Shown: positions 15,580 to 53,600 of the stretch, piece by piece
How positions within the stretch are numbered: the stretch's first letter is position 1
Layout: each line of letters opens with the position of its first letter
Assembly (NCBI RefSeq): GCF_030144855.1
Contig: NC_082736.1
Location: 6,386,001-6,450,000 of the forward strand
DNA from: Hypanus sabinus
Lineage: Eukaryota
DNA: 64,000 bases
Direction: 5' to 3'
Notes under the pieces: generated by a model
Database searches by the model: none
What the model was told of the DNA's origin: nothing
Seen by the model: only the letters and a program-made list of their open reading frames with translations
Made by a program: the position numbers and the translations under genes

Positions 15580-15651
15580 TGCGATGGCTGGGAATCGAAC
15601 CCGGATCAACTGCTTGGAAGGCAGCTATGCTCACCACTATACCACCATCGC
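15580..15651 (-). tRNA. tRNA-Gly (TCC), variant
   Basis: Minus strand GCGATGGTGGTATAGTGGTGAGCATAGCTGCCTTCCAAGCAGTTGATCCGGGTTCGATTCCCAGCCATCGCA; anticodon TCC; TTTT terminator about 11 nt downstream; one C-A mismatch in the T stem. Confidence 0.93.
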
Positions 15652-16289
15652 TCAATGATGTTGCAAAGGATTTGAGTAGTGAGGAGTCTTCCATAGTTCA
15701 ATGGGACTCCATCAGTCTCCAAGCTGCTGATTAAAATCTGGGCTGAAAAGGAAAAGTCAGTTACAGGCCAAATCGAGGTGGCGGGGACCAGGCCCCAAAT
15801 CATATCAAAGCGACTGAACCCAATGTCTGCACAATGATTTAGACGCAGGGCCAGATTGAAAAGGTCAGGTTGTTCTGCCTGAGGCCAGGGACAAGCCGGT
15901 TCAGTTCGCTGATCCACTCTGCACTGAACTAAGCATCTGTGCACAAACTCTCTTTGAGCATTTCAGTTTAAAACTCTACAGAATTTGCTTGTGTTTATTG
16001 TTTGCAGGATTTGTCTTTCTTTCTGCACATTGGGTGTTTGATGGTCTTATTTTATTAGTGGGTTCTTTTGGCTTTCTCTGTTTCACGACAGCCTGTTTGA
16101 AACAAACCTCAAAGTTGTATAATGTATACATACTTTAATAATAAATTCACTTTGTACATTGATTCAAAAACCTGATGCTTGAGGGATAAAATAAGGACAA
16201 AAAGATAACCAACTCAAAAATGATTCTCTTTTAATTATAGGCCAGGATGCAGAAGAGCGCAAAATGACAAATATTCTTCACTTTTTTAA

Positions 16290-17930
16290 GAATTGCAATA
16301 GGGACAAGATGGGAAACTATACCCTAGTGACTCTTACATTAGTGGTAGGGATATTACAAATTGCTGATATTATTGGAAAAGATATTTAACGATAGGATCA
16401 GCTTGCATCTGAAAAGGCATAAACAATTTCAGAGTAGCCAATATCGCTTTGCATGGGCAACGTCAAGTCTTGCGAACATGGCCGAACGTTTTAAGTGACA
16501 AATTCAATCGATGAGAGTTGGGTAGTGGGTATAGGACACATGGACTTTGGTAAAGCTTTCAACAAGAGTCCCCATGGTGGGCTGATCCACAGCATGGAAG
16601 CACATGGCTCAAAGGAAATTTGGTAGAGTATATTCAAAATGCAGCTTGTTCAGAGAACACAGAAGGTAATGGTTGAGTGGTGTGATTCTGACTGGAGACC
16701 TGTGAACAGTGGGGCCCACAAGAAATTCTACTCTTTGTGAAATGATTTGGATGAAAATGAAGGAGGGCTGATTTGTTGGTCTGCAGAGACACAGAAATTG
16801 GTGCAGTTATGGATCGTGAGGAAAGTTGTCAAAGGATTCAGCAGAACATAGACCAGCTGGAAATGTGGGCAGAGAAATGGGAGATAAGTCGGTGTACTCT
16901 GGGAAGTCAAATGTCAGAGGATTTCTTTGGAATTCCTCTCCCCATCAGAGTGGCTGGAATTACAGTTACGGCAGTGACATGCTCCACCTCAGGATGTGGG
17001 AGTCACTCAGTGTCCCCGATAACTTCACATGAGGGAAGTGCACCGAGGTGCAGCTCCTGACTGACCGTGTGAAGGAAATGAAGATGGAGATGGACAGACC
17101 GAGAGTTTCCAGGATGCTGAGACCAGAGGTTCAGTGAGTTGGTCACACCTGAGGTCAGAATGCAGACTGTTGTGTGACCATCACGACGGAAAGGGGAAGA
17201 GACAGACAGAGTAATGTCTCCCTGTGGCCGTGACCCTCAGCAACAAGTACACTCCTTTGGATACCCCTGGGATGACAAACCAGAGACAGCAGCTCGCCAG
17301 GTCGGTGGTACTGAGACCCCAGACCGATGCTCCGCGGGAGGAAAGGTCAAGCAGAGCAGTGATGACAGCAGACTCACAGTACAGGGGATGTGCAGGAGAT
17401 TCTGTGGCAGCAACAGAGATGACACGATGGTGTGTCGCCTCCTGGGTACTGGGGTCAGGTCCGTCTCAGACGTGCAGGATTTCCAAACGATAAACTTGCC
17501 AGTCGAGTCAGTGGTAAGGAAACCAAATGTCGGCATTCATTTCAAGAGGACTACAATATAAAAGCAAGGATATAAGCATTGGTCCGATCACACTTGGAGT
17601 ATTGTGAACTGTTTTGGGCCCCTTATCTACAAAGCTACATGCTCGCATCGGAGAGGGTCCAGAGGAAGTTCACAAAAATGATCCTGGCAATAAAAGGGTT
17701 AATGCACAAGGATTGTTTGATAGCTCTGGGCCTGTACTCTCTGGACTTTAGAAGAACGAGGGAATCTCATTGAAACCGATCAACTATTGAAAGGCCTAGA
17801 ATGGAGTGGGGAGGGTGTTTCCGATAATGTGTCAAGGACCACAGGGCACAGCCTCACAATACTAGGACATACTGTTAGAACAAAGATAAGGAGCAATTTC
17901 CTTAGTAAAGAGCAGTGAATCCGTGTAGCC
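16290..17930 (+). mobile_element. CR1 fragments including ORF1 (zinc-finger/coiled-coil + SGNH esterase) remnant
   Basis: RMWE..SVPDNFT.GKC..VQLLTDRVKE, PVAV.LSNKYT.LDT, RRFCG..RD..MVC.L.G..V; RT pieces on either side. Confidence 0.8.
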
Positions 17931-19390
17931 TATGTCAGGATGTTGCTCATTGTCTAGAGCTCAACATTTAACACTATCATTCCCACAGTCCTGATCAATA
18001 AGCTACAGAACCTGGTCCCTCTGCAAGTGGATCCTCGACTTCCTAACCGGGAAACCACAGTCTGTGCGGATTAGTGATAATCCACACAGATTGTGTGGAG
18101 ATATGGAGACGGGCTAACCCCTATTGACATCAATGGATCTCGGGTTGAGAAGGTAAACAGCTTTAAATTCCTCGGCATCAACATACCCGAGGATCTCACG
18201 TGGTCTGTACGTACCTGCTGTGTGCTGAAAAAGGCACAACAGCGCCTCGTTCACCTCCCAAATCCTAAGAACTTTCTACAGTGGCATCTTTTGGAGCATC
18301 CCGACTGGCTGCATCACTGCCTGGTATGGGAACAGTACCTCCCTTAATTGCAGCACAGCCCAGCGCATCTGTTGTTGTCAAATTCCCATGATTCAGGACA
18401 TTGACAAAGACAGTTGTGAGAAAAGGGCCCGAGGGACCATCGTGGACCCCAGTCACCCCAAGCACAATCTATTCCAGCAGCAACCATCCAGGAAACGGTA
18501 CCACAGCACAAAAGACAGGACCAACAGGTGTCTGGATAGCTCCTTCCACCATGCCATCAGACTGATTAACTCACGATGATTTGAGGGTACCTCTCTGTTA
18601 CACTGGCTGTTCTATTTATTATCAATTATTATAAATCACTGTGATTGCACATTGCATATTTAGACAGAGACATAACATAGATTTTTAATCCTCATGTATG
18701 TGAAGGATGACAGAAATAAAGTCAATTCAAATTCAACTATCTCCTCTTCACTGACGATCAACACTGGCCCTGCTGCACCTCAAGGATGAGTGCTTAGCCA
18801 ACTGCTCTACTCCCTCTAAGCCCATGACTATGTGACTAAATATAGCACAAATGCAATCTAGAAATATGCTGCATACAACCATTGTTGGTAGAATCTCAGA
18901 TGGAGATGATTGGACACACAGGAGTGAGATATACCAGCTAGTTGAGTGGTGTCACAGCAACAACCTTGGGCTTAATGTAAGTGAGACAAAACAGCTGATT
19001 GAAGGAAGGGTCAGATGAGGGAACACAAACCAATCCTCATATAGGGATCAGAAGTGGACACAGTGAACAATTTTAAGTTTCTGGGTGTCAATATCTCTAT
19101 TGATGCAGCTACAGTATAAAGAAGGCAAGACAACGCGTATATTTCATCAGGAGTTTGAAGATATTTGGTTTGTCACTTTAACACACCCAAAAACTGCTGT
19201 AGATGTATTCTATATATTATTTATAATATTTCTATTTTTGCACTATTTTAATTTACTTAATATACATATCCATATATCCAGTAATTTATTGTTTCTATAT
19301 TATCAAGTCCTGCATTGAACTGCTGCTGCTAAATTAACAAATTTCCTGACTCCTGCCGGTGATAATAAACCTGATTCTGGTCCTGACTCT
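17930..19390 (+). mobile_element. Rex1/Babar-like LINE fragments
   Basis: INGSRVEKVNSFKFLGI.I.EDLTWS....KKAQQRL; DPSHP.HNLF...PS.KRY; tail gataataaacctgattctg. Confidence 0.8.
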
Positions 19391-20058
19391 GAATTCATCC
19401 CCACAGACGGATGTGACCAATTAATTGGGTATATTTAATGTGGAATTTCTCGATTGTGGGTGGGGGCGGGATAAGTGTGTTTGAGAGGGTTAAGAGATCT
19501 GTCATGATCTCTTACTCCTGGCAGAATGGGGTAGCAGACTGGATGGGCCAAATGGCCTAATTCTGCTGCTGTGTCTTATGGTCCAATGGTCCAGGAGCAG
19601 CTGCAGGACATTTCAAAGGGAAGGTTGAGCAGCCGGACATCGTGGTGGACGGTGCGTGTTGGTAATAGCAACGCAGGGATACGGAGGGTTGTGTCCTGTG
19701 TAGTAAATTTAGAGAAATAAGACAGAAACTAAAAAGTAGTAAGCTCTGTATTACTCCCAGTGACACTTGTTAGTGGGGGGAGATATAGAGAGTTACCAGT
19801 GATGAACGTGTGGCTCAGGAGCTGGTGCAGGGGACAGAGTGCCAGGAATTGAGTGTTTTATAGACAGTAGTATTCACATTTTAATTTGACTTTTCGGTCT
19901 TATAAATATTTAATATTTGTATTTTCTATATTTGTGTGGATAATCTTTTACAATTTGGGATAGAAAAACGTTGTAACTAGATCACTGAACACTTCATGAA
20001 AACAGAACGTTACGGAAACATACTGTCAAAGTCAACATTTTAATCCAATGTAAGTTAA

Positions 20059-22330
20059 TAGAAGCATAGAAAACCTACAGCACCAAACAGGACTTTCGGC
20101 CCACAAAGTTGTGCTTAACATGTCCCTACTTTACGAATTACTGTGCTTACCTATCCAAATGTCTCTGAAAAGACCCTATAGTATCCGCCTCCACCACCGT
20201 TGCGGGCAGCCCATTCCACGCACTCACCTCCCTCTGAGTAAAAAACTTACCCCTGACATCTCTGTACCTGCTCCCCAGCACCTTAACCTGTGTCCTCTTG
20301 TGCAGCCAGTTCAGCCCTGAGAAAAAGCCTCTGACTGTCCACACGATCGATGCCTCTCATCATCTTGTACACCTTGGGCCTAAATGAAACGATGCTGACT
20401 TTGTCCTATTTTATCATGTGTCGCCAAGTAGCCCGAAAATACATCGAGTCCATCATCTTCCCGACCACTGAGGTCAGACTGACTGGCCTATGATTTCCTC
20501 TCATCTGCCCTTCTCCCTCCTTCAAGAGTGGAATAATGTTTGCAATTTTCCTCTTCTCCAGAGCCACGCCAGAATACAGGGATTATAGAAAGATTATTCC
20601 TAAAACTGCCACTATCTCTTCAGTCACCTCTTTCATAGCACTGGTGTAGAAAATCCCGTCCAGCTGATTTATCTACCTTCAGATCTTTCAGTTTCCCAAG
20701 CAGCTTTTCCACAGCAAAGGCCAATTCACTCATTTCTGCCCCCTGATTCTCCTGAATTTCCAGCAGACTGCCAGTGTCTTCCACAGTGAAGACTGATGCA
20801 CAATACTTATTCAGCTTCTCTGCCACTTCCCTGTACCCCATTACGACGTCTCCAGCATCATCTACTTTTGCCTCTCTTTTACACTTTGTATATCTGAAGA
20901 AACTTCTGGTATCCTCTTTAATACTAATGGCTAGTTTACCTTCATATTTCATCTTTTTCCTCTCAATGACTTTTTTAGTTGGTTTCAAAGTTTTGTAAAT
21001 TGTATAACTGAGTGTTAGGGATGTCTCAGAGCAGCTACTGAACAATGTTCACTCAGCCAGAGGTGGTGGTTCACGTCAGTAGCAGTGGACAGGTAGAAAA
21101 GGGATGAGGTCCCACAGTGAATATAGAGAGTTAGGGAACAAGTTAAAGAGCAGGACCTGAAAGGTTATAATTCTTGTGTTACTCCCAATGCTCTGTGGTA
21201 GTTCGGGTGGGAACAGAAAGTTAGAGCAGATGACTGTGTGGCTGAGGAGCTGGTGCAGGGACCGGGTTTCAGGATTCCAGAACACTGGAACCTCTTCAGG
21301 TCCAGAGGTGACATTTACAAGGGGGAGGGTGGTTTGCACCTTCACGGGGGGGGGGGGGGGGGGGTCTGTATCATGAGGTTCATTGTTGCTCCCTGGGAGG
21401 GTTGAAATGAGATTGACAGGGGGATGTGAACCAGAACACCTGTCACTGAATGGAGAGATTGACGCCAAGTTTGATGCTTAACACTGCAAGGATGGATTTT
21501 GAGGCAAATCCTCATCTGACATGAGTTTGTTTAAAGACAGCTGCACAGTGATTCAGGGCCAGTTTGTTCCTGTAAGGGGGAGGGTCCAGGATGGCAAGGT
21601 TCAGGAACCTTGGATGATGAGAGAGGAAGTAAATTTAGTCGAGGAAGAGTGAGAAGCATATGCAAGGCTTAGGAAGCTGGAATCAAACAGGGGGTTTGAG
21701 GATGATATTTAAAACACAGAAGGGAACACAAGAACATTTGGAGAGTGAGAAACAGTGATGAAAAATCTCTGATGAGCAGGATTAAAGATAACCCCACTGC
21801 ATTCTGTACATTCATTGTGGTGAAAAGGATACCCAGGGGTGCACGTCCAACATAAAGCATGGGTACACAGGTAATGGCAGGAACATTAACATACAGAAGG
21901 ATGCTGGGTCCGGGCAGATTGGTTCCCTGAAACTGGGAGCACAGGTTGACAGGGTGGTAAAGCCGGTGTACGGCATGTTTGCCTTCACCGGGCAAGGCAT
22001 TGAGTTCAATCACCAGGACATCATGTTACAGTTTATAAAATGCTGGTTAGGCCACAGTGAGAGCACAGTGTTCAGTTCCGGTCACCTCATTCTAGGAAGC
22101 ATATGGAGGTTTCGGTGCAGGTGCAGAAGTTGTTAAGCAGGATGTCTGGAGGAGGAGTGAGGTGAGGAGAGGCTCGACATGCTGGAGCTTTTTCCTCTGG
22201 AGTGGCGTCAGCTCAGGAGAGATCTGACAGAAATTTATACAGTTTTGCTGGTGTACACTGTCAGGGGTGGTGTCAGAGGCAGAGAGCACAGGGGTATTTA
22301 GGGAAGTCTTAAACAGACAGGAATTTGGAG
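20059..22330. mobile_element. CR1 fragments (minus 20059-21000; plus ORF1/ORF2 debris 21010-22330)
   Basis: RDVRGKFFTQR..SAWNGLP, KLAISIKEDTRSFFRY, esterase-like VIIL.LLP..N.WLRSWC, AYGMFAF.GQGIE. Confidence 0.75.
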
Positions 22331-28177: not shown

Positions 28178-28300
28178 GGCGAGTGCATGGAATGGGCTGA
28201 CAGTGACCGCGGTGCAGGCGGAGATGATAGGGTCTTTTAACAAACTCCTAGATGGATACATGGAGTTTAGTAGATTAGAGGGCCATGGATAAGCCTAGGT

Positions 28301-29430
28301 CAGGTGTCGGCAACCCACGGCTCCGGAGCCACATGCGGCTCTTTGATCTCTGTGCTGCAGCTCCCTGTGGCTTTGGAAAATAAACGATGAGTGTTTGATT
28401 AAAATGTATTTTATGTTAGTTTGTTAGTTTTTGAAATGTTATTCTAAATTTGAAGATTATGGTGATCTTGTACAATCTAAATAAAACGTGTTTTTTGCCG
28501 CTATTAATATACGTCACCACTGCCAATGCCTGACACCCGCCAGTGCGCGTTTTCTTTAATTTTTCGATCCAAGGTCGGCTAACTATGGAGAATTCTAAAA
28601 AAAGAAACGTGATTGAAGAAAACAGAAAGTTTAATGATACGTGGGCAGATTCATTTGCTTACACTGCTGACGAGACTGGTTTACCGGTATGCTTAATATG
28701 CAATGAGAAACTAGCAAACAACAAAACATCAAAAGTCGCAAGACATTTCCAGAATAAACACGCAGCCTTTGCTCCAAAATACTCGGATGGAGATGAGAGA
28801 AAAAAAGTCGTTTCAGAACTGATGCGGAATGTTGATCTGAGCAAAAATCATTTCACGAAGTGGATGATGTCTGGAAAATCAATGACATACTCTAGTTTTG
28901 TGCCGCTCAGGAAATAGTCAGGCACGGGAAGCAGTTTACAGATGGTGAATATATAAAAGTATCTTTCATTAAGACTTCAGAACATCTATTCACGGACTTA
29001 AAAACAAGAGTGAAATTCAGCAGAAAATCAGGGATATGCCCCTCTCTGCAAAGACTGTCAAAGACAGAACCATAAAAATGGCAGAAGACATCACAAGACA
29101 GTAAATTAAAGACATCAATTCAGCTGTGGCCTACTCGATTGCCTGTGACGAGTCTAAAGACAAAGGTGATATTGAACAAATAGCGCTGTTCTGCCGGTAT
29201 GTAAACTCTGCCGGGCCACAGGAAGAAATGATTGAGTTGATACCTCTAAACAGCCAAACACTGGGGGAGGACATCTGTGAGGCTGTCTTGAATTGTTTAA
29301 GAGCCAAAGTAATAAAGACCACCCACCTGGTGTCAGTAGCTACTGATGGGGCACCAAGTATGACAGGAGCGCACAAGGGATTTGTGGCTTTACTGCAGAA
29401 GTCGCTGGAGAGAAAGCTGCTGACTTTTAG
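28301..29430 (+). mobile_element. hAT (Charlie/GTF2IRD2-EPM2AIP1-like) transposon, 5' half, pseudogenised
   Basis: Terminus CAGGTGTCGGCAACC after target gccTAggt. ATG 28585 MENSKKR..ENRKFND.W, BED-like PVCLICNEK..VARHFQNKH, YSIACDES.D, VATDGAPSMTG; frameshifts, stop and 3' truncation. Confidence 0.92.
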
Positions 29431-31680: not shown

Positions 31681-34240
31681 TTGGTCATTACCAGTCTCTG
31701 AATAAACAACTCTGTAAAAAGTGATATTTCTTTGTTTAAACTTGAGAACAGTTTGTTTCAGAGGCCATGTTGTTCTCCTTGTGCACAGGTAACTAAGGTT
31801 TGATTGAAGAACGAGTGCGAGTTTTCAGATTCCAGCTACTGGGTGATGGTGGAAACATGGAGTTTCCTCTGAGAAACTGAACCCTTGGCTTTGTTTTACA
31901 GGAGAAAGGAATTCAGCCCCTGTAGCCAATCAGTCCTCAAACAGAATTCCTTGTGTGTGGAGTAGTCCATCACCTTTGTCCACTGTCGGAAGGCTGCAAC
32001 AGTAAAGAAGGAGCATTAGGTGGGTTTGAATCAGCTGAGGGAATAGAGGGAAACTGTGGCTGCCTCGGGCTGGGCTAGATCCCATGAATCGATGGGAAAA
32101 GAGGATGCCTCATGCTGGATTGAATCCCATTGGTCATCATGCATATGCCTTGGGGTGGATTTGACCCCATGATGCACGAAAGAAAGGGAATTCTGAAGTA
32201 TGAGTGAGTGCCTTGATTGTGTGTCTGAATGGTCACGTGAGAGTCTCTTACTCGACATCTAAGACGACTCGGTGGCTTGTTTATTCGTATATTGTGGAGC
32301 AGAAAGAATTAAGTATGTTGAGAAGGGGTGGAATGGAAGAAGGGAGTGCTTGCAGAAATACAGATAAAGGAGAAAGGAAACTTTCAGGAGCCCTGTGGTG
32401 TTCACCTGGAGAGAAATGCAGAAATAATTGGTTGCTCCTCACAGTAAGAGCAGAGAAGCTGAATAAAAAAGGTTAGAGAAATAGAGTCAGAAAGAACAGG
32501 AAAGTGTAATCAACTCTACCTCAATGTTTAAGAGACTACTAGACAGGAATATGGAGGAACTTAAGATGGGGGGTTATATGGGAGGCAGGGTTTGAGGGTC
32601 GGCACAACATTGTGGACTGAAAGGCCTGTAATGTGCTGTACTATTCCATGTTTAACAAGACACAACTCGTACTAATGTCTGAGTAGGAAGTAGTAGGAAC
32701 CTGTTTTACCCCTGTCCCCCACAGGTACAGTTACAACAAAGCCCACCCCAGTAGTGTCTTGCGAGTTCTTGAAGAGGCTGGTGTAAATCTCTCAAAAGCT
32801 CGATGGGAGAATGACCAATATGGAGACTTTTATGCACTTTGAACTAAAATGTCATGTTATACTGAAGTGTTTCCTTCACACTCCAGAGTGACATATGATA
32901 CACCATATTGCACAAAAAGCAGATGGGCACCTTAATAAATTTGTAAAGTAGATAAACAAAGTATTTCAGAAATACACTGATTTACTCGATTGTAATGAAT
33001 GTTATTGCAAATGATGATTAAGTGAGTCCAGGTTAAAGGAAATGTAGATTGTTACTTGTGTTAGATGAAAAGAGGTAAGTAAAATTCTGAGTGGTTTACA
33101 ATAATTTCAGATGAAATCAAATGCTTCAAGCTGTTAAGGGAGTGGATAATATTTGTGTGAGGACTGGAGACTCCCTGGACTGCTCTACCATTGTCTCATT
33201 AATATTGACCGTTGTATAAATATATTGTGACAGCTGCCCTGTATGATTTGAATGTTATTTTAACTTGTATTCTGTTTTATATTTAATAAAGATGACTGTG
33301 ACCACATTGTTGCTCATCATTACTATATTAAAGCTGTTTACAATTTCATTCTAAATTTTGTTTGAACGTTACCTGCTTTAAATGCATTTGACTTGTCACC
33401 CACTTGTGACTGGTATTTATTTTGTTCTGAACATTGTATAGTGTTACTTAGAGGGGGAAAAAACAACTATTCTAAATTATGGATTTTGCAGTTCTTTGAT
33501 TCACTTCAGGAAACATGGGGAGAAGGCGGAGGACAGTTACTTGTAAAAGGTGGGGCGTCAGTGAGAGGTGCACCTTGTTTATGGACAGTCTCGCCACTGA
33601 GTTCAAAGATGCCCTCAGCGCCAAAGCAACTTTGATAACAGTCAGTTTCACCCTCAGCCGCCACAAACACCACAGACTATGAAGTTTACTTTAAATAATC
33701 CTTTCCCAAACTGTACTGTAGAATTTGTACAATTGTAATTCTGCCCGCTGTAAAATGCCTCCTGATGTAAGCCGGTGTCTCAGTTTTTGGCCTTGATGAC
33801 TTTTTCGCCTGATATGATACTGGAAACAATGTCAGTGGATACGTGGTTTGTGCACCTCATGTCAAAGATGAGGCGGCACAGCTCCTGTTCCATACAAAGA
33901 ACATGACCCTTACTTATGAACGCATGTTGGTACTAAACGCTCGAGTTGTTGAGTGTGTTGTAGGGGGCCCATACATACGGAAGGTGGGTTAACAGTGAAG
34001 TCTGAACCCCTCAATTGTACTGAGTGATTCTGTTATAATGAACTGCCCCCCACCCCCGCCCCCGATTAGCTTCATTCCTTGCTGTGATGCTCTACTGTCC
34101 CGGGGTCACAACAGTCCGAACTATATTCCACCTTGCCAATGCCGAATGAACTGATTTAGCGTAAACACAAATTCTTTGTCCACTTTAAATTTGTCTTCTT
34201 AAGACAAAATTCCCCTTGAATGGTGCAGTAAAATTTGTAA

Positions 34241-34303
34241 CTCCCCGTCGGGGAATTGAACCCCGGTCTCCAACGTGACAGGCGAGGATACTAACCACTA
34301 TAC
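34241..34303 (-). pseudogene. tRNA-Asp (GTC) pseudogene, first 9 nt removed
   Basis: Minus strand GTATAGTGGTTAGTATCCTCGCCTGTCACGTTGGAGACCGGGGTTCAATTCCCCGACGGGGAG = vertebrate tRNA-Asp from position 10; TCCTCGTTA replaced by the hAT end; anticodon-stem and T-loop substitutions. Confidence 0.93.
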
Positions 34304-34770
34304 CGGGGGTCGGCAACCCGCGGCTCTGGAGCCACATGTGGCTCTTTTACGTCTGTGCTGCGGCTCCCTGTTGCTTTGGGAAATAATTGGTTGTGGCGAC
34401 CCTTTTCCTGGCACATCCGAACCGACTCACAATAAGATAGCCTACGGGGGTTTGCGAGCACAGAGCTTTGGAGCCTCTGCGCCATGGGGGGGGGGGCAGG
34501 TTGAGGGAGGCTTAAAAGTGAGGCTGAAGATTTCGAATAAAGTTTTTTTCCTTCGACTGCAGTTACCGACTCCGTGTCGTAATTTTAGCGCTGCGTGTAG
34601 CACACCGCTACATGGTCAGTATTTAGCCGTAGGCTATCTTATTGTGAGTCGGTTCGGATGTGCCAGGAAAAGGGTCGCCACAACCAATTATTTCCCAAAG
34701 CAACAGGGAGCCGCAGCACAGACGTAAAAGAGCCACATGTGGCTCCAGAGCCGCGGGTTGCCGACCCCCG
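34304..34770. mobile_element. Composite hAT-derived foldback MITE with perfect 144-bp inverted arms
   Basis: 34304-34447 is the exact reverse complement of 34627-34770; termini CGGGGGTCGGCAACC match the hAT end at 28301. Confidence 0.95.
34392..34612 (+). mobile_element. Short (221 bp) solo LTR nested in the MITE, probably Gypsy
   Basis: TGTGGCG...CGCTACA termini; 4-bp TSD tggt (34388-34391, 34613-34616); internal CTTAAAA and AATAAA. Removing it restores alignment to the hAT subterminal sequence near 28370-28400. Confidence 0.85.
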
Positions 34771-35384
34771 GTCTAGGGGATAATATTTTGTCCGATGGAA
34801 ATATAAAAGTCACTCAGTTCCTGCAGGCTTCAGCCTTTGTGGACCGCTGGGTTTTCACTTGTTGGAGAGAGAGAGAGAGATTAGTGAGAAAAGAAACTTG
34901 CCCGGGTCTTTTATGAAGCAAATCCGTTGAAACGGGAAAGTTGGTTCCTCGTTGTTAGTTCAAGAACATCGGTTCTATGGTACCTGCCACCGGCTCCCAA
35001 GCAAAGGGGAACCGAACGCACATGGCTTCCTTCAAATGGCTTCCTGCTACTACGGGATCATTAGTGTTTCTTCTGGTGCGTCTGAAGGGGTTGTTCCCCC
35101 AGACCCTCTTTTATACTTCCTCATGGGGTCACAGATATCAATCAGGTTGGGATGATGCAATCTCTTCTCAACCAGCCCACTTTGCCCGAGGGCTTACACG
35201 TAGCATAGTCCCCAATCCACAAATGTGGTCTCCAGGAGACAATGGTCAATGTTGCGTTATTTTGCATCACTGGGGAACGAGGCATCCAGCATGTCTCTCT
35301 CCCATTTCCTGGGTCTACTGACACCACCCCCGCCCAACTAGTGCTCTTGCAATTCTCACAAAGGAGGGGGCTGCCCGCATAACA
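34771..35384 (-). mobile_element. Truncated LTR, same family as 49828-50680
   Basis: gtctaggggataat..tgtccgatggaaatataaa aligns with 50030-50065; also shares cccagacc.cttttat..caatcaggttgggatgat; ends ..cataaca. The U5/polyA side is cut off at the MITE. Confidence 0.85.
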
Positions 35385-35457
35385 ACATAATGTAGCATTT
35401 GCAAACCTGCCAGTGAACATGGAATTTCCTATTTCAGTAGAATCGGGCTGATTTCAT

Positions 35458-35530
35458 CCTGGTCTTATATTGGGAAGGAAAGTGAGCGAGTCCTGGACTT
35501 ATATTGGGAAGGAAAGCGAAGGAGTCCTGG
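35458..35530 (+). repeat. 34-bp tandem duplication
   Basis: cctggtcttatattgggaaggaaagtgagcgagt / cctggacttatattgggaaggaaagcgaaggagt / cctgg. Confidence 0.85.
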
Positions 35531-36114: not shown

Positions 36115-37460
36115 GAGGTCAGTAAGTTGATGGAGAAGATACTGAGAGGCAGGATTTATGAAGGCATCATATGATTAGGAATATTCAGCATGGCTTTGTG
36201 AAAGGCAGGTCGTGCCTTACGAGCCTGGTTGAATTTTTTGAGGATGTGACTGCACACAGTGATGAAGGCAGAGCCGTAGATGTAGAGTATATGGAATTCA
36301 GCAAGGCATTCGATAAGGAACACAATGCAAGGCACATTGAGAAAGTAAGGAGGCATGGGATCCAAGGGGACGTTGCTTTGTGGATCCAGAACTGGTTTGC
36401 CCACAGAAGGCAAAGACTGGTTATAGAGTTGGTATATTCTACATGGAGGCTGATGAACAGTGGTGTGCTCCAGAGATCTGTACTGGGACCCCTACTCTTT
36501 GTGATTTTTATAAATGACCTGGATGAGGAAGTGGAGGGATGTGTTAGCGAATCTGCTGATAACACAAAAGGTTGGGGGTGTTGTGGATAGTGTGGAGTGC
36601 TGTCAGAGGTAACAGCGGGACATTGATAGGATGCAAATCTGGGCTGAGAAGTGGCAGGAAGGTATGATGTGGTTCATTTTGGTAGTTTGAATATGATGGT
36701 AGAATGTAGCATTAATGATAAGACTCTTGACAGTGTGGAGGATCAGAGGTCTGAATCCATAGGACACTAAAAGATGCTAAGCAGTCTGACGCTGTGGTTA
36801 AGAAGGCATACGGTGCCTTGATATTCATTAATCGTAGGATTGAGCTTTGGAGCTGAGAGGTATTGTTGCAGCTATATAAGATCCTGGACAGATCCCACTT
36901 GGAGTATTGTGCTCAATTCTGCTCGCCTCACTACAGGAAGGATTTGGAAACCATAGAAATGGTTCAGGTGAGATTTACAAGGATGATGCTTGGATTGGGG
37001 AGCATGCCTTATGAGAATAGGTTGAGTGAACTTGGCCTTTTATACTTGGAGCGGCAGAGGATGAGAGGTGACCTGATAGAGGTGTATAAGATGATGAGAG
37101 GCATTGATTGTGTGGATAGTCAGAGGCTTTTTCCAGGACTGAAATGGCTGCCACAAGTGGACACAGGTTTAAGGTGCTGGGGAGTAGGTACTGAGGAGAT
37201 GTCAGTGGCAAGTTTTTACATTCAGAGAGTGGTGAGTGCGTGGAATGGGCTGCTGGCAACGGTGGTGGAGGCGGATAAGATAGGGACTTTTAAAAGACTT
37301 TCAGATAGGTACATGGAGCTTAGAAAAAGCTATGTCCATGGAGGTACATGGAGCTTCGAGGGCTTTGGGTAAGCCTAGTAACTTCTAAGGTAGGGACATG
37401 TTCAGCACAACTTTGTGGGCTGAAGGGTCTGTATTGTGCTGGAGGTTTTCTACGTTTCTA
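36115..37460 (+). mobile_element. CR1 LINE, 5'-truncated (same subfamily as 205-2085)
   Basis: QHGFVKGRSCLT, SGV.Q.SVLGPLLFVIFINDLD, RGDLIEVYKMMRG; 3' tail. Confidence 0.93.
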
Positions 37461-37676
37461 TTAACTTAATTTGGATTAAAATGTTGACTTTGACTTATTT
37501 CTCCATAACGTTCTGTTTTCATGCAGAGGTCCAGTGATCCACATACAACGTTATTTCACCTCAAATTATAAAAGATTATATACACAAGATTATACAAAAT
37601 ACAAACATTAACTATTTATAAGACCGAAAAGTCAAATTAAAATGTGAATATTACTGTCTATAACACACTCAATTCC

Positions 37677-37996
37677 CGTGGGTGGGGGGTGGGGTCACTG
37701 TTCCCGGAAATGCCCCTCTGTACCCACTGTGTTCCAATGCTCGCAGTTTCTCAGTGGCACCACTGATTGACAGTTCTCTCTGACCCCGCCTCCCGTCACG
37801 TGACACCGTGTTGCGATGATGCCGTGCGGCGATTATGACGAGATGAAGACGCCACATCAACACCGACGTCGTTTCCATGGAAACGGTCCGGGATGGTGGG
37901 CACGGGGTTGTGGTAAAGTGGAGTCGGTCTCTACTTTGGGTTTCGGCTCCACTGTGGGAATCGGCCTCTCCTCTTCCTGCCCACGGAACAGTGAGT
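37677..37996 (+). promoter_or_regulatory. CpG-rich promoter-like cassette with putative first exon (copy 2)
   Basis: GC box, palindromic E-box GTCACGTGAC 37795-37804, palindromic X-box GTTTCCATGGAAAC 37871-37884, donor ACA|GTGAGT at 37990/37991. Confidence 0.5.
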
Positions 37997-40900
37997 GTCT
38001 GTCAGCGCCTCACCGCACCGGCTCTCTGCCTCAGGTACAATATTTAAACCATATTTGCACAGTTACATGGATAGGAAAGGTTGAGAGGGACACGGGCCTA
38101 ATGCAGGCGGATGGGACGAGTTCAGGTCGACAACTTGGTCGGCCTCGATGAGTTTTACCGAAGGGACGGTTTCAGTTCTGTATGAATCACTGTCTCTATT
38201 CTGGGCGGTTCAACCAGGGCAGGATGTACACAGTGAATGTCAGGTTCCTGAGAAGCTTTAATGAACAGAGACTTTGCGGGTTTCTGCCCCCACACCTCCT
38301 CCGACTCTGACTCTCTAACTTTTGTATGCCTCACGTAATTTTATCCACCTTCATCAACTCACCCTTCAGATTCCCTTTCAACCTCCACCCTGTCACGTCT
38401 TAGTTTCTGTCTATTTTCTCTAAATTCACTGCACAGGACACAACCCTCGTATCCCTACATTGCTACTACCAACATGCACCGTCCACCACTATGTCCGGCT
38501 GCTCAACCTTCCCTTTGAAATGTCCTGCAGCTGCTCCGAGACCATCGGACCATAAGACACAGCAGCAGAATTAGGCCATTTGGCCCATCCAGTCTGCTGC
38601 CCCATTCTGCCAGGTGTAAGAGATCATGACCGATCTCTTAACCCTCTGAAACACTCTTATCCCATCCCCCCCCCCCCCCCCCACAATCGAGAACCTCCAC
38701 ATTCAATGTACCCAATGAATCGGTCACATCCGTCTGAGGGGATGAATTCAGAGTCAGGACCAGAATCAGGTTTATTACCACCGGCAGGTGTCAGGAAATT
38801 TGTTAATTTAGCAGCAGCAGTTCAATGCAGGACATGCTAATATATAAAGATGGTTGCTGCTGGAATAGATTGTGCTTGGGGTGACTTGGGTCCACAATGA
38901 TCCTTCAGGCCCTTTTCTCACACCTGTCTTTGAAACTGTCCTGAATGATGGGAAGCTCACAACTACAGATGCGCTGGGCTGTCCGCAACACACTCTGCAG
39001 AGTCCTGCGATTGAGGGAAGTACAGTTCCCATACTAGGCAGTGATGCAGCCAGTCGGGATGCTCCCAGTTGTGCCCCTGTAGAAAGTACTTAGGATTTGG
39101 GGGCCCAGAGCAAACTTCCTCAGTTGTCTGCGGTGAATGAGGCGCTGTTTTGCCTTTTCCACCACTCAGCAGGTACGTATAGACCACGTGAGATCCTCGG
39201 GTATGTTGATGTCGAGGAATTTAAAGCTGTTTACCTTCTCAACCCCAGATCCATTGATGTCCATAGGGGTTAGCCCATCTCCATGAACAATCTGTGTGGA
39301 TTATCACTAATCCGCACAGATTGTGGTCTCCCAGTTAGGAAGTCGAGGATCCATTTGCAGAGGGACCAGGTTCCATTGCTTATTGATCAGGACTGTGGAA
39401 ATGACGGTGTTAAATGCTGATCTCTTGTCACTGAACAACATCCTGACATAGGCAGCACAGATTCACTAGCTTTTTCCAAGGAATTTGCTTCTTACCTTTG
39501 TTCTAACCACTGACCACTGACTCGACTGGCAAGTTTATCTTTAGGAAATCCTTCACATCTGAGATGAACCTGACCCCAGTAGCCAGAAGACAACAGACCA
39601 TCGTGTCATCTCTGTTGCTGCCACAGAATCTCCTGCACATCCCCTGTACTGTGAGTCTGCTGTCATCACTGCTCTGCTTGACCATTCCTCCCGCGGAGCA
39701 TCGGTCTGGGGTCTCAGTACCACTGACCTGGCGGGCTGCTGTCTCTGCTTCATCATCCCAGGGGTATCCAAAGGAGTCTACTTGTTGCTGAGGGTCACGG
39801 CCACAGGCAGACATTACTCTGTCTATCTCTTCCCCTTTCCGTCGTGATGGTCACACAACAGTCTGCATCCTGACCTTAGGTGTGACCAACTCATGAATCT
39901 CTGGTCTCAGCATCCTGGAAACTCTCGGTCTGTCCATCTCCATCTTCATTTCCTTCACACGGTCAGTCAGGAGCTGCACCTCGGTGCTCTTCCCTCATGT
40001 GAAGTTATCGGGGACACTGAGTGACTCCCACATCCTGAGGTGGAGCATGTCACTGCCGTAACTGTAATTCCAGCCACTCTGATGGGGAGAGGAATTCCGA
40101 AGAAATCCTCTGACATTTGACTTCCCAGAGTACACTGACTTATCTCCCATTTCTCTGCCCACCTTTCCAGCCTGTCTATGTTCTGCTGAATCCTTTGGCA
40201 ACTTTCCTCACGATCCATAACTGCACCAATTTCTGTGTCTCTGCAGACCAACAAATCAGCCCTCCTTCATTTTCATCCAAATCATTTCACAAAGAGTAGA
40301 ATTCCTTGTGGGCCCCACTGTTCACAGGTGTCCAGTCAGAATCACACCCCTCAACCATTACCTTCTGTGTTCTCTGATTGAGTACATTTTGAATATATTC
40401 TACCAAATTTCTTTTGAGTCATGTGCTTCCAAGCAGTGGATCTTGTTGTGGGACTCTTGTTGAAAGCTTTACCAAAGTCCTTGTATCCTGTACCCACTAC
40501 CCAGCTCTCATCAAGTGAATTTGTCACTTAAAACGTTCGGCCATGTTTGCAAGAGTTGACGTTGCCCATGCAAAGCTATATTGGCTACTCTGAAATTGTT
40601 TATGCTTTTTCAGATGCAAGCTGATCCTATCATTAAATATCTTTTCTAGTAATATCAGCAATTTATGATATCCCTACCACTAATGTAAGAGTCACCGGGG
40701 TATAGTTTTTCGTCTTGTCCCTATTGCAATTCTTAAAAAGGTGAAGAATATTTGTCGTTTTCCGCTCTTCTGCATCCTGGCCTGTAATTAAAAGAGAATC
40801 ACTTTTGAGTTGGTTATTTTTTTGTCCTTATTTTATCCCTCAAGCATCAAGTTTTTGAATCATTGTTCAAAGTAAATTTATTATTAAAGTACGTATACAT

Positions 40901-41169
40901 TATAGAACTTTGAGGTTTGTTTCAAACAGGCTGTCGTGAAACAAAGAAAGCCAAAAGAACCCACTAATAAAATAAGACCATCAAACACCCTATGTGCAGA
41001 AAGAAAGACAAATCCTGCAAACAATAAACACAAGCAAATTCTGTAGCATTTTGAACTGAAATGCTCAAAGAGAGTTTGTGCACAGATGCTTAGATCAGTG
41101 CAGAGTGGAGTAGCGAGCTGAACCGGCTTGTCCCTGGCCTCGGGCAGAACAACCTGACCTTTTCAATCT

Positions 41170-41864
41170 TTTCTTTCCTTTTTCAATCTTTTTATTAATT
41201 TTTATTAAAAAAAACATAACATAGTATTATATTAAATAGGTCATGAATGCATTAGACTTAGAGTTAAATTAGTAACAAGATAACAATATCATTAAACTAT
41301 CAGCAAAAAAAGATCGTACAATAATCAAATCTATATTGATTATACATGAAAAAGATTAGAAATAATCATCAAAAGAAAAAAAAATAGAATACAAGAAAAA
41401 AATGTATATTTATGAAATAAAAAAAATATATAAAAATATATAAACCTAAACTAACATGGGCAATAATAATAATTTATATGTATATGATGGTGTCAAAAAC
41501 TCCGGAACTCCATACCAGAACAAGAATAAAAAGAGTAAAGGTCTTGAAGAAGCCAAATTAATTCATATGAAAGTGTCGAATGAACGGTCCCTAAGTTTCT
41601 TCAAATTTAATTGATGAATCAAAAACAGTACTTCTAATTTTTTCTAAACTTAAACAAGAACTAGTTTGAGAGAACCACTGAGATATGGTAGGAGGATTTA
41701 CTTCTTTCCAATTTTGTAATATAGATCTCCTGGCCATTAATGTTACAAAGGCAATCATTTGTCTAATTGAAGGGGAGAGTCGACTATCATCTTCATTTGG
41801 TATACCAAAAATTGCAGTGATAAAATGAGGTTGTAAATCAATATTCCAAATTGAGGAAATGGTA
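41170..41864 (-). mobile_element. L1-clade LINE, 5'-truncated, 14-bp TSD
   Basis: TSD gaccttttcaatct 41156-41169 and 41865-41878; ORF2 C-terminus AIFGIP...IAFVTLMARRSILQNWK..NPPT.SQW...LSLEKIR; empty site present in arm A (about 15853-15866). Confidence 0.92.
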
Positions 41865-42203
41865 GACCTTTTCAATCTGGCCCCACGTCTAACTCGTTTT
41901 CCAAACATTGGGTTCAGTCGCTTTGATACAATCTGGGGCCTGGTCCCCGCCACCTCGATTTGGTCTGTAACTGACTTTTCCATTTCAGCCCAGAGTTTAA
42001 TCAACCGTACTTAGGGTTTTCCTCACTTTCTGTGACGTCGGTTCTGCCACATCAAATTGCCTCCAAGTCGAAAGGGACGTTACAGGCTATTCATTGACCA
42101 GAAAAAGAGATTCACTGATGTCACCATAAACCAGAACCAGTGGAGATAACTGCATTTAATTTCACTTAACTCACCGCAGAACTATTTTCCACAATCTATC
42201 AAT

Positions 42204-49827: not shown

Positions 49828-50680
49828 TGTTACGAACTCCGTAACTGGGTATCTTACCAGCAAAGATAGGAGTATCCGTTGAAGTCTGATGATACTAGAT
49901 TTAACAGTATTTATTAGTAAAAAAACACAAAAATAATATCAATGCAAATATACAGATAATATATGTCATCAATACTAAACCTAAAAGTGTGGGTATAATA
50001 ATAATCAATAAGAAATAAGCTCTATCGTTGTCTAGGGGATAATGAATTGTCCGATGGAAATATAAAGTTCAGTTCAGTTCATGCAGGCTGTGGTGGTTTA
50101 TTGGTCACTATGTTGCAATTGTTGGAGAGAGAGAGAGAGAAACAGCTATTGACCTGCCGACCTTCCTTTTCGATCTTGATCCGTCGATGCGTTGTTGTTG
50201 TGGCCATTCACTTATGACCCCTCTGTCCTTTAGCGAGACCATTCTTCCGTCACGGACTCGTCACACAGGCAATGGTGGACACACACACAAGCCCCCACTG
50301 GTCTCGTAGTGTCTCTCCTGGTGCGTCTGAGGGGTGTTTCCCCAGACCTTACTTTTATCCCCGCTCACGGGGTCTCAGGTGTCAATCAGGTTGGGATGAT
50401 ACAACCCATCAACCAGACCACTCTGGTTGCCCCCTGAGGAGTTTCAATGAATTGAACAGTACTCAATACACAATCCTTCTCCAAGAGACAATAGCAGTAA
50501 TCAGTGGTTCCGTTCCGCTTTTGTTAGGAGACATTCCACTTTTGTGTATCTCTGCGTTGTCACTCTCTCATTTCCTTGGTATCAGACCCAAAATAGTAGC
50601 GATTTTGTGATTCTCAAAAAGAGGTGGGGGGGGCGACTTTGCACCCTTCTGCCCATGAGAGTTGCTCCTCATTCGTAACA
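49828..50680 (-). mobile_element. Solo LTR (853 bp), probably Gypsy
   Basis: TGTTACGAA...TTCGTAACA inverted termini; 4-bp TSD ctag (49824-49827, 50681-50684); minus-strand AATAAA near 49910; inserted in a CR1 relic. Confidence 0.92.
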
Positions 50681-50689
50681 CTAGTCCAT

Positions 50690-53600
50690 ACAACCTGTCC
50701 TTCTAACTCTGACTCCCCAGGTCTAAGCAACCATCTGATATTTATTTTTTTCTGTGCACTCTTTCTAGTTTAGGAACATCTTTGCTATAATAGGGTGATC
50801 AAAACGATAGTCAGTATCCCCAGTCAGTCCTCACCAAAGACTTGTATATCTACAACGTATCTTCTCAACTCTTATACTCTGTGCCATGAATGATGAAGGA
50901 CAGCAGGTCAAACAACACCAACTTCACCACTGTTATCTCCTTGAGGTGTCAGATCCGGTGAACTATGATTCACATGGATATTGTTTATATAAATTACGAA
51001 CAACAAAGGTCCCGGTGTGCAGTGCAACACCACTTGACAGAGACCTCCAGTCTGAGGTATAACCATCAACCCACCAGCCTCTGCCTCCTGATACTGAGGC
51101 AATTATGAAACCAATCAATTATCTCCCTTGGATTCCATCTCTCAGAACTAACCTCCCAGACCAGAGTCAAAGGTCTGGCTAATGTCCAGATAGACAACAC
51201 TCACAACCCTAACCTCATCTACGCACTTGTGAAATTCCTGAAAGAGTTGCAAGATATTTGTGAGACATGATTTCCCTTGCACAAAACTGTGCTGACTGTC
51301 TTGAATCAGACCAAATGTTGGTAGATCCTGTTCCTCAGAAATCACTCCAGTATATTCCCCAACACTGATATCCTGCCTGTAGTTTCCTGACTAGTTTCCA
51401 CTACCCTTTTTAAACAATGGCACAGCATTAAACCAAAAGACCTAAAGTCATTGGAGCAGGATTAGGTCTTTTGGCTCATCCAGTCTGTTCCATCATTCCA
51501 TCATGCCTGATTTATTATCCATCCCAACCCCATTCTCCGAACTTCTCCCCGTAAACTTTGATGCCATTAATAATAATTAAATCCCACTAACATCTGCTTT
51601 AAATAGACCTACTGACTGCCTTCATGGCCACCTGTGCCAAAATAAACCCATCGATAAAGAAATTACTCATCTCTATTCTAGAGGGGCATCTTTGTATTGA
51701 GGGTGTGGTCTGGTTCTAGACTCTTCCATTATTGGAAACATCCTCTCATATCAACACTACCTAGGCCTTTCAACATTCAATGTGTTTCTATACGATGCTC
51801 CCTCATTCTTCTAGACCCCAGTGAGTACCTGCCCAGATCATCAAATGATGGTTATATCCTAACTCTTTCAGACTTGGGATCATTCTCGTGAATTTCCCCT
51901 GCAGCTTCTGCAATGCCAGCACAGCCTTTCTTAGAAAATTGACCCAAACCTGCTCATGATACTTCAAATAAGGTCTGACTAAAGCTGCAGCATTAGATGC
52001 TTGCGTTTATATTCTAGTTCTCTTGGAATGAATACATATATTGCATTTGCCTTCCTTACTACCATCTAAACGTGCACATTAACCTTTAGGGAATCCTGCA
52101 CTAGTACCCCCAAAGTCCCTTTACACATCTGATTTCTGTTCTCTCCCTGATTAGATGGAGTCTATGCCTTTATTCCTCCACCCAGAGGACACGGCCACAC
52201 ACTTCCATACACTGTATATTGTCTGGCACTTACTTGTCCATTCTATAAATCTGTCCAAGTGCTACTGCAGACTCCCTGCTTCCATAACACTGCCTGCCGC
52301 TCATTCTATTTTTGATTTATCCACAGACTTGGCCTCAAAACTGTCAATTCCACATTAATCACTCTCCAATCACGTGTCACCTCAAATGGTGCTTGTGATG
52401 AAGCAACAATTTCTCCCGTGGCCTCCACAGTGTATTCTCTAACTTCTCACAAAATATAAGAATGTACCTGATATGACCCTGGAGATTCAACAGCCTTAAT
52501 GCATCTTAAGGTTTCCAATATAGATCCCTGCTAATTTGAATGTGGTGTAAGAAATCACAGCTGATTCCTGCTATTTTGGTAGCTCCATCACTTTCCATAA
52601 TTTTCTCAATGGTGAAATAAACGTCAAAAACATTCCTGGAAAGCCTCTCCCATTTCCTTCACTTCCACACACAGATGGCCATCCTCATCTCCAAGCGGAA
52701 CAATTCTGTCCAAATTCCCTTTTCCTCTGATTGTACGGAGAGAATCTCAGGGGATTTTACTCGCTTTTCCTTCCAATTCTTGATATATCGTCCTTTTACA
52801 CGCCTAATTTTTATGAGAGATCGTATGTCTAATAATATTCTGGAACAATTACCTGAGCAGTGATCCAAGCCTCATCAGTCAGTAATTTCCTGGTTTGACT
52901 CTATTGCCTGAGGAACAACATGCCCTGGAATATCAGCATTCCCTTCTCTGATCTCACTATCCTCTATGACCACATTGATGAATAGTGATGTGAAGTACTG
53001 GTTCAGTCCTTCGCCCACTTCAGACATAAACTCTCTCCTTTGTCCTTTTGTTGTTGTACTCTCACCATAGTGCCCCTTCTCCCCACAGTCATTTCTTGTC
53101 CCCGTTTCAAACTTTTATCTTCTCTGTTGCTTGCTTCATATTGCCAGAGGCCATCTCCAATTTATACACCTGAAACATTCTTTATCTTTTTCTTTCAGAC
53201 TGAATTCATAACATCTCTTACCACGCCCTTCTGCCGAACTTTACCATCCTTGTCTTTCCTCCACACATCGAAACAGTCTGAATTCTGACCTGATTGCCTT
53301 TAACAAACAGTCACATGTCAAACACAAAATACTCTGCAGATGCTGAGGTCAAAGCAATGCGCACAACACAGGGTGTTGGCCGGAAACATTGACTGTCCGT
53401 TTCCACGTATGCTGCCCCCCCCCCCCCCCCGCCCCCCCCCCTGCTGAGTTCCTCCAGCGTGTTGTGAGAGTCACATGTCAAATATGGTTGGACAAATCAC
53501 ATTCCGCTCTCTTCAGTTCCTGTCCAACACAGTTGCCTTTCGCTATAATCCCGATTGACCACATAACCACTGTGTCCAGTCTTGTGCTTATTTACTTTTC

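What the first reader, a model, noticed from the sequence alone, without database searches (positions are those of the whole stretch)
34296..34778. Newly assembled composite foldback transposon (hAT end + captured LTR) with two different transposase-type junctions
Seen: the left end of the hAT family at 28301 received a 221-bp solo LTR (TSD tggt). The first 144 bp (88 bp hAT + 56 bp LTR) recur as an exact inverted copy forming the right end, so LTR sequence is now part of the terminal inverted repeats. There is no TSD: the flanks are cacTAtac and gtcTAggg. Known: Buster/Charlie hATs prefer 8-bp NNNTANNN targets; both flanks fit, as do gccTAggt (28293-28300) and atcTAtgt (62352-62359). Inference: both ends were joined by transposase to different targets, through intramolecular transposition with adjacent deletion or recombination between two copies. 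That makes this a young, mobilisable MITE born by template switching. Arm identity implies recency.
Basis: partly seen in the sequence, partly recalled or inferred. Interest (0 to 1): 0.8.

Follow-up and report, generated by a model that had tools for sequence, protein, structure and literature searches.

The report
Head-to-head hAT-plus-LTR palindrome, one-off rearrangement
A 467-bp perfect palindrome made of two copies of the same transposon end, each carrying a piece of a retroviral-type LTR, is really in the sequence, but it looks like a single local rearrangement scar between ordinary high-copy repeats and not a newly born, jumping mini-transposon.

Summary
Arms 34304-34447 and 34627-34770 are 144/144 complementary. 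The outer 88 bp match the hAT left end at 28303-28383 (88%). A 221-bp TG..CA unit with tggt on both sides interrupts that end. The two 8-bp flanks differ (cactatac, gtctaggg).

Contigs from other individuals show that every building block is high-copy. They include LTR-less hAT copies with a single tggt (the empty site). Other copies of the right-flank repeat continue leftwards where this one stops, so that repeat is interrupted at 34771.

The hAT|LTR junction is probably a subfamily feature, not a local event. Contigs of another data set carry it in two sequence variants. Other first-stage notes on this genome describe LTR cassettes in hAT 5' ends at other loci, unverified; none describes a foldback.

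The fold-back junction itself (34626|34627) is not abundant. It joins hAT position 97 to LTR position 56 with one extra G and no microhomology.

Best reading: two left ends of the LTR-bearing hAT subfamily integrated at two NTCTAGAN-like targets and were fused by one internal deletion and end joining. An alternative-transposition product is equally compatible. 'Mobilisable MITE' and 'template switching' are unsupported. The locus could not be checked with reads. Interest is low to moderate.

The parts
34242..34303 (-). tRNA-Asp-like sequence (GTC anticodon context), missing its first ~9 nt; forms the left flank
   Evidence: Rfam tRNA RF00005 at 34242-34308 (-), 28.1 bits, E 0.0036, just under the gathering score of 29. 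ARAGORN does not call it. Moderate summed depth (67-130) against 0 further left.
34296..34303 (.). Left 8-bp flank cactatac (GTATAGTG on the other strand)
   Evidence: fits nnnTAnnn.
34304..34391 (+). hAT left end, 88 bp, terminus CGGGGGTCGGCAACC
   Evidence: 87.7% to 28303-28383; summed depth 8,500-15,000 in organism A.
34392..34612 (+). 221-bp solo LTR (TG..CA, TTAAAAG at 34512, AATAAA at 34536) with 4-bp TSD tggt at 34388-34391 and 34613-34616
   Evidence: Contigs end at 34612, and empty-site hAT copies appear as loose ends at 34683. Summed depth 14,000-46,000.
34617..34626 (+). hAT sequence resuming after the LTR (cagtattta, hAT positions 89-97) plus one extra g; the inner fusion point is 34626|34627
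   Evidence: LTR-less copies read cagtatttaattaaaatg (loose ends at 34683). Compare 28301 copy. Neither partner predicts a g at 34626.
34627..34682 (-). Inverted copy of LTR positions 1-56
   Evidence: Exact complement of 34392-34447.
34683..34770 (-). Inverted copy of the same 88-bp hAT left end
   Evidence: Exact complement of 34304-34391.
34771..35391 (+). High-copy repeat forming the right flank, cut off on its left side exactly at 34771 (first 8 bp gtctaggg)
   Evidence: Homology to 50030-50705 starts at 34771 = 50030. In all four runs other copies continue leftwards with ...GCTCTATCGTT (loose ends at 34771). Depth falls to unique level at 35392.
28301..28917 (+). Reference hAT copy: left end CAGGTGTCGGCAACC after flank gcctaggt, then a zinc-finger ORF fragment; no right end in the window

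Best explanation
This is a one-off rearrangement scar, not a demonstrated transposing family.

The building block is a subfamily of a Charlie/Buster-type hAT element whose left end (88 bp in) was hit by a 221-bp LTR, leaving a solo LTR with TSD tggt. That subfamily then spread. Two left ends of this subfamily were integrated by transposase at two different NTCTAGAN-like targets. One target lies in the D-arm of a tRNA-Asp-like sequence. The other lies inside a high-copy repeat about 0.85 kb long. The two ends lay head-to-head.

Everything between hAT position 97 of the first copy and LTR position 56 of the second was then lost. The lost material included both right ends, both partner TSD copies, the 5' tip of the tRNA-like sequence and the left part of the repeat. 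The broken ends were joined by end joining, with one extra G and no microhomology.

The two left ends may have been two separate insertions, for example a local hop in inverted orientation. They may instead have been engaged in an alternative transposition. I cannot separate these.

Shown: the anatomy, the exactness of the arms, the interrupted flanks, the high copy number of the parts, and the LTR empty site. Inferred: the head-to-head pair and the deletion.
For: - Arms are 144/144 and both end exactly at the hAT terminus.
- The flanks differ (3/8 as a direct repeat), and each fits the hAT target. GTCTAGGG and GTATAGTG compare with NTCTAGAN (PMC3014272, PMC2836564). Five other hAT copies in X1 also run into gtcta after the terminus.
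- The right-flank repeat is interrupted. Other copies continue leftwards in four runs and at 50019-50029. The left flank is a 5'-truncated tRNA-like sequence. Neither missing piece is in the window.
- The hAT|LTR junction exists elsewhere. X24 contigs 34627-34693, 34664-34770 and 34664-34765 carry it in two variants, at depth 21-40.
- Other first-stage notes on this genome, unverified, describe LTR cassettes in hAT 5' ends at several loci.
- Inner junction: hAT position 97, then g, then LTR position 56 inverted, with no microhomology.
- The fold-back junction is not abundant. One of three sampled words is held by three runs, and none by X1-X4, which hold the parts at depths of thousands.
- Precedent: a local hop gave an inverted Ds pair 1.1 kb apart that then generated deletions and inversions at high frequency (PMC3239180).
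Against: - No partner copy and no reciprocal junction is in the window.
- The model needs two independent copies identical over 144 bp, including 10 CpGs per arm.
- The flanks are 12/16 alike in the inverted sense, p about 0.004 even given an NTNTAG core. Target preference only partly explains this.
- One X24 contig ends exactly at the inner arm boundary 34627. That is what a second occurrence of this boundary would give.
- The low-coverage runs do not cover the unique flank 33600-34239, so the locus itself was not independently verified.
Confidence: 0.45

Rival explanations
1. A single LTR-bearing hAT copy in the tRNA-like sequence became a fold-back in place. The cause would be template switching during gap repair, or aborted re-replication after alternative transposition. 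One end was then re-joined by transposase to a nearby target, with loss of the DNA in between (adjacent deletion or hybrid-element insertion).
For: - Identical arms are most simply explained as a copy of one another.
- Both outer joints are precise and target-like.
- Maize Ac sister-chromatid transposition plus re-replication yields composite insertions with two inverted Ac 5' fragments of unequal length, fused at a non-homologous point (bioRxiv 10.1101/2020.01.07.897926).
Against: - It needs two rare events.
- The maize products carry perfect 8-bp TSDs, which are absent here.
- The inner junction has no microhomology, so it gives no positive sign of template switching.
- Nothing shows that two left ends with a CGG terminus are a substrate for the transposase.
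Confidence: 0.22
2. The 467-bp fold-back is a low-copy MITE family that has already transposed. This copy lost its TSD by recombination between two family members.
For: - An X24 contig stops exactly at the inner arm boundary, and another stops at the terminus.
- One junction-spanning word is present in three further individuals.
- The parent hAT family is abundant in organisms A and J.
Against: - X1-X4 and X24 hold none of the three junction words, although they hold the parts at depths of tens to tens of thousands.
- No second copy is in 64 kb.
- No first-stage note on this genome describes such a fold-back.
- Contig ends in high-copy repeats can coincide with a boundary by chance.
Confidence: 0.12
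3. This is an assembly artefact: a falsely folded-back join in the assembly.
For: The locus is embedded in high-copy repeats, and no independent read or contig spanning the outer junctions could be obtained.
Against: - The palindrome is small (467 bp) with a 179-bp unique-order spacer.
- Its ends coincide to the base with a transposon terminus, and its inner end with nothing repeat-related. Collapse or chimeric-read artefacts do not produce this pattern.
- One junction word occurs in three other individuals (weak).
Confidence: 0.05

Closest known systems
Composite insertions from Ac/Ds alternative transposition with re-replication (maize p1-ww-id alleles)
   Same: Two fragments of the same (5'/left) hAT end lie in inverted orientation. 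They are of unequal length, are fused at a non-homologous point, and form a perfect hairpin.
   Different: The maize insertions are kilobases long, sit at the edge of large duplications, and are flanked by perfect 8-bp TSDs. This one is 467 bp with no TSD, and no duplication is detectable in the window.
Closely linked inverted Ds pairs and the deletions they generate (rice OsRLG5)
   Same: A local hop creates a second, identical copy in inverted orientation, each with its own 8-bp TSD. Deletions and inversions follow (PMC3239180).
   Different: There the rearrangement breakpoints are at transposon termini. Here the inner breakpoint lies inside both elements and looks like plain end joining.
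hAT-derived MITEs (e.g. Mar in Drosophila; hAT-N families of Anolis)
   Same: Short and non-coding, with hAT termini and an nnnTAnnn / NTCTAGAN target context.
   Different: Those are multi-copy, carry 8-bp TSDs and short TIRs (11-16 bp), and retain a left and a right end through internal deletion. This one is a single detectable copy with two left ends, 144-bp arms and no TSD.
Nested solo LTR inside a DNA transposon that goes on transposing
   Same: The LTR has its own 4-bp TSD inside the hAT 5' end, and the junction is found at other loci (unverified notes).
   Different: That describes the parent subfamily, not the palindrome.

Membership tests
hAT superfamily (Charlie/Buster-type) element end | Sequence similarity of the end to an element that encodes a hAT transposase | tested here: met
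   87.7% over 81 bp to 28303-28383. That copy is followed by PF18658 zinc-finger (E 1.3e-6) and weak DUF4371 (E 0.037, below cut-off) ORF fragments.
hAT superfamily (Charlie/Buster-type) element end | 8-bp target-site duplication | tested here: not met
   cactatac against gtctaggg, 3/8 as a direct repeat. Each flank on its own fits nnnTAnnn / NTCTAGAN.
hAT superfamily (Charlie/Buster-type) element end | Canonical terminus CAG (YARNG, from my own knowledge) | tested here: not met
   Both termini read CGGGG, while the 28301 copy reads CAGGT. The X24 contig 34664-34770 runs to the terminus with a single difference somewhere in its 107 nt, so CGG is probably a subfamily trait.
MITE (amplified non-autonomous DNA transposon) | Many copies with the same internal structure at different sites | tested here: inconclusive
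   One copy in the window. One of three junction words is held in three runs and none in X1-X4 or X24. The whole genome could not be searched.
Solo LTR | TG..CA ends, a short TSD, an empty site in other copies of the host sequence, and high copy number | tested here: met
   TGTGG..GCTACA with tggt on both sides. Empty-site hAT copies and contig ends at the LTR boundary, summed depth 14,000-46,000.
Solo LTR | Full-length relatives with PBS, PPT and gag-pol between two such LTRs | not testable with these tools
   There is no other copy in the window, and the genome is not searchable here.
Alternative-transposition composite insertion (Ac type) | Two inverted fragments of the same transposon end fused non-homologously | tested here: met
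   the inner junction has one extra base and no microhomology.
Alternative-transposition composite insertion (Ac type) | Perfect 8-bp TSD around the composite, with an associated duplication or deletion | tested here: not met
   There is no TSD. A deletion is implied by the two interrupted flanks but is not demonstrated.
Foldback (FB) transposons | Long terminal inverted repeats built from tandem subrepeats (from my own knowledge) | tested here: not met
   The arms are hAT plus LTR sequence with no internal tandem repeats.

The most novel reading that the evidence does not exclude
The palindrome may act as a functional by-product. It is a perfect 144-bp hairpin that joins hAT-end and LTR sequence. 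If it is transcribed through, it could yield double-stranded RNA and small RNAs against two high-copy families at once, as the Ac composite insertions do in maize. Alternatively, it could be a nascent two-left-end MITE whose inverted repeats now include LTR sequence and which the transposase can still move.
Probability: 0.1. Interest if true: 0.55.

Novelty: new member of a known kind. Interest (0 to 1): 0.27.

Why it matters
If the preferred reading is right, this is an ordinary footprint of transposon-driven rearrangement in a repeat-rich vertebrate genome. It is a useful worked example of why a perfect palindrome with transposon termini and no TSD need not be a new mobile element.

It does show that the LTR-bearing hAT subfamily was active recently enough to leave identical copies. 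The family is abundant in organisms A and J. At 90% identity or above it is almost absent from organism B, which shares the unique flanks at about 92-95%.

It would matter more if the hairpin fed small-RNA silencing of both families, or if further copies with TSDs showed that LTR sequence can be recruited into functional hAT inverted repeats.

Tried and rejected
- Read support for the locus: the only read-laying run used low-coverage contig sets. They do not cover the unique left flank, so neither the outer junctions nor an assembly artefact could be tested.
- Copy count of the fold-back junction: the second run search sampled only three words, so the result is weak.
- Fetching other copies through spurious ORFs: the 64-aa ORF across the hAT|LTR junction found no candidate. 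That collection evidently lacks this organism's repeats, so the 150-aa ORF was not sent.
- Two metagenome scans, one for the hAT|LTR junction and one for the hAT end: no match.
- The search of earlier findings by sequence: blank. Searches by words returned titles only.
- Fold-back replication running through the terminus into the flank, followed by a homeologous switch: rejected. The right flank is repeat-type from its first base (34771 = 50030), which leaves at most 2 nt (GT) for a switch.
- Right flank as a tRNA-derived SINE head: rejected. Other copies are conserved for at least 30 nt further upstream.
- Rfam mir-9209 match at 34692-34774 (21.7 bits against a threshold of 90): chance.
- The large inverted repeat 15728-20151 / 37368-42003 around the locus: no ORF of 120 aa or more. 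It was not followed further and does not bear on junctions inside its spacer.

Full report
**What is there**

Window 34304-34770 is a 467-bp palindrome. Arms 34304-34447 and 34627-34770 are exact reverse complements, 144 of 144, with 179 bp between them. Patterns taken from the arms occur nowhere in shuffled sequence. The single strand folds at -237 kcal/mol, z = -35.

The outer 88 bp of each arm align at 87.7% to 28303-28383. That is the left end of a degraded hAT copy. Its downstream ORF fragments carry a Spin-doc-type zinc finger (PF18658, E 1.3e-6) and a weak DUF4371 match (E 0.037, below cut-off). Both are usual in Charlie/Buster-type hAT transposases (my own knowledge).

After the 88 bp comes a 221-bp unit, 34392-34612. 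It starts TGTGG, ends GCTACA, has TTAAAAG at 34512 and AATAAA at 34536, and has tggt on both sides.

Then follow nine bases of resumed hAT sequence (cagtattta) and one g. After that comes the inverted copy of LTR positions 1-56 and hAT positions 88-1. The 8-bp flanks are cactatac and gtctaggg, 3 of 8 as a direct repeat.

**What the reads add**

I laid Logan contigs of two individuals of organism A (X1, X2), of organism J (X24) and of organism B (X6). Unique sequence near the locus has depths of about 3-10. The hAT end has summed depths of 8,500-15,000, the LTR 14,000-46,000, and the right flank up to 36,000. All building blocks are therefore high-copy families. Summed contig depth is not a copy number.

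- Contigs stop exactly at 34612, the LTR end.
- Loose ends at 34683 in X2 and X24 read the hAT sequence continuing (cagtatttaattaaaatg...) after a single tggt. This is the empty site, and it proves the LTR is an insertion into the hAT end.
- Loose ends at 34771 in all four runs show that other copies of the right-flank repeat continue leftwards with ...GCTCTATCGTT. The copy at 50019-50029 does the same. That repeat (34771-35391) is therefore cut off exactly at the hAT terminus.
- The left flank is a tRNA-Asp-like sequence on the minus strand that lacks its first ~9 nt (Rfam tRNA, 28.1 bits). Neither missing piece is in the window.
- Organism B holds orthologous unique flanks (33828-33908 and 35380-35495, about 92-95% identical), the LTR 3' part and the right-flank repeat. 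It holds almost none of the hAT end at 90% identity or above. The hAT family therefore looks lineage-restricted and fairly young.

**The hAT|LTR junction is not private**

In X24, contig 34627-34693 overlaps by 30 nt (k-1) with two variant contigs. These are 34664-34770 (1 difference) and 34664-34765 (4 differences), at depths 21-40. Together they reconstruct the whole 144-bp arm including the LTR|hAT junction, in at least two sequence variants.

Several other first-stage notes on this genome describe an LTR-like cassette of about 212-221 bp inside hAT 5' ends at other loci. One describes a composite hAT family that kept transposing with a captured solo LTR. These are unverified AI notes and I could see titles only. 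They agree with the contig evidence. The LTR capture is therefore most likely a subfamily-level event, not something that happened here.

**The fold-back junction is not abundant**

I searched the run index with 34597-34657, in which 30 of 31 possible words span 34626|34627. Only three words were sampled. Three further individuals of organism A hold one of them. X1-X4 and X24 are not among the holders. This argues against a high-copy fold-back family. It gives only weak support that the junction exists outside the assembly.

No fold-back of this kind is noted elsewhere in the genome. Attempts to fetch other copies through ORF searches and metagenome scans were blank.

**Junction types**

Both outer junctions lie exactly at the hAT terminus. 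Vertebrate hAT families have TSD consensus NTCTAGAN, NHCTAGRN or NTNTANAN (PMC3014272; PMC2836564). Buster-type elements have nnnTAnnn (PMC3517528).

GTCTAGGG (right flank), GTATAGTG (left flank on the other strand) and GCCTAGGT (28293-28300) all fit. Five other hAT copies in X1 also run into gtcta beyond the terminus. These are best read as two integration joints at two different targets.

The inner junction joins hAT position 97 to LTR position 56 in inverted orientation. It has one base (g) that neither partner predicts, and no microhomology. That is the signature of end joining, not of microhomology-guided template switching.

**Most likely history**

Two left ends of the LTR-bearing hAT subfamily were integrated at two sites and lay head-to-head. 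One deletion removed everything between hAT position 97 of one and LTR position 56 of the other. It took both right ends, both partner TSD copies, the 5' tip of the tRNA-like sequence and the left part of the repeat. This needs one rare event on top of two ordinary insertions.

hAT elements hop locally. In rice, a second Ds landed 1.1 kb from the first in inverted orientation, each with its own TSD, and the pair then produced deletions and inversions in about a third of regenerants (PMC3239180).

I cannot separate this from a product of alternative transposition. In maize, sister-chromatid transposition plus aborted re-replication gives composite insertions with two inverted Ac 5' fragments of unequal length fused at a non-homologous point (bioRxiv 10.1101/2020.01.07.897926). 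That is strikingly like this anatomy. However, those insertions carry perfect 8-bp TSDs and this one does not.

**What does not fit, or is open**

- The flanks are 12 of 16 alike in the inverted sense (GTATAGTGGTTAGTAT against GTCTAGGGGATAATAT). This has p about 0.004 even among window sites with an NTNTAG core. Target preference explains the core, not the rest.
- The X24 contig that starts exactly at 34627 is what a second occurrence of the inner boundary would give. Contig ends in high-copy repeats can also coincide by chance.
- The locus itself could not be verified with reads. An artefact is unlikely on anatomical grounds but is not excluded.
- The termini read CGG where the 28301 copy has CAG. 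Because the X24 contig reaches the terminus with a single difference in 107 nt, CGG is probably a subfamily trait. Whether it is compatible with transposition is unknown.
- Zero differences between the arms bound the age only to about 7-35 My for assumed rates of 1.5e-9 to 0.3e-9 per site per year. Arm-to-arm gene conversion could reset that clock.

**Verdict**

The structure is real and was read correctly. The two transposase-type joints at different targets hold, and a rearrangement between copies is the best reading. The claims of a newly assembled, young, mobilisable MITE born by template switching are not supported.

It is a new example of known kinds of transposon-associated rearrangement. 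Interest is low to moderate unless further copies with TSDs, or hairpin-derived small RNAs, are found.

Noticed in passing
window 15728-20151 and 37368-42003: A collinear inverted repeat about 4.4 kb long (85-98% complementary in blocks) brackets a 17-kb spacer. The spacer contains both the hAT copy at 28301 and the palindrome. There are no ORFs of 120 aa or more in the left arm. It could be two copies of a long degraded element or a segmental inverted duplication.
   Followed up: partly
window 12152-12226 (+), 15580-15651 (-), 34242-34303 (-): tRNA-Asn(GTT) and tRNA-Gly(TCC) genes plus the truncated tRNA-Asp-like sequence. The region looks like a tRNA gene cluster, and a hAT integration has decapitated one member.
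   Followed up: partly
window 34288-34303 vs 34771-34786: The two flanks are 12/16 alike in the inverted sense, beyond the 8-bp target core (p about 0.004 given an NTNTAG core). This may reflect an extended target preference of this hAT family, or chance.
   Followed up: partly
window 34433 / 34641: Many other copies of the LTR family carry about 17 extra bases after ...gactcacaa (loose ends TAGCCAGCGTTCCGGC... in X1 and X24). The LTR in this element belongs to a shorter subfamily, and both arms share that variant.
   Followed up: no
window 34304-34391 / 34683-34770, read depths: Organism B shares the unique flanks at about 92-95%, the LTR 3' part and the right-flank repeat. It has almost no hAT end at 90% identity or above. 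The hAT family seems to have expanded, or arrived, after the A/B split.
   Followed up: partly
window 62360-62400: Another transposon end, CGGGGTCCCCAAC..., follows the flank atctatgt. It resembles the CAGGGGTCCCCAAAC termini of the Anolis hAT-HT2 families (PMC3014272) and is a different family from the one at 28301.
   Followed up: no
window 59853-60033: Three tandem copies of a 55-61-bp unit (91-92% alike).
   Followed up: no
window 11026-11318: A run of 293 N, an assembly gap or masked stretch, left as it is.
   Followed up: no
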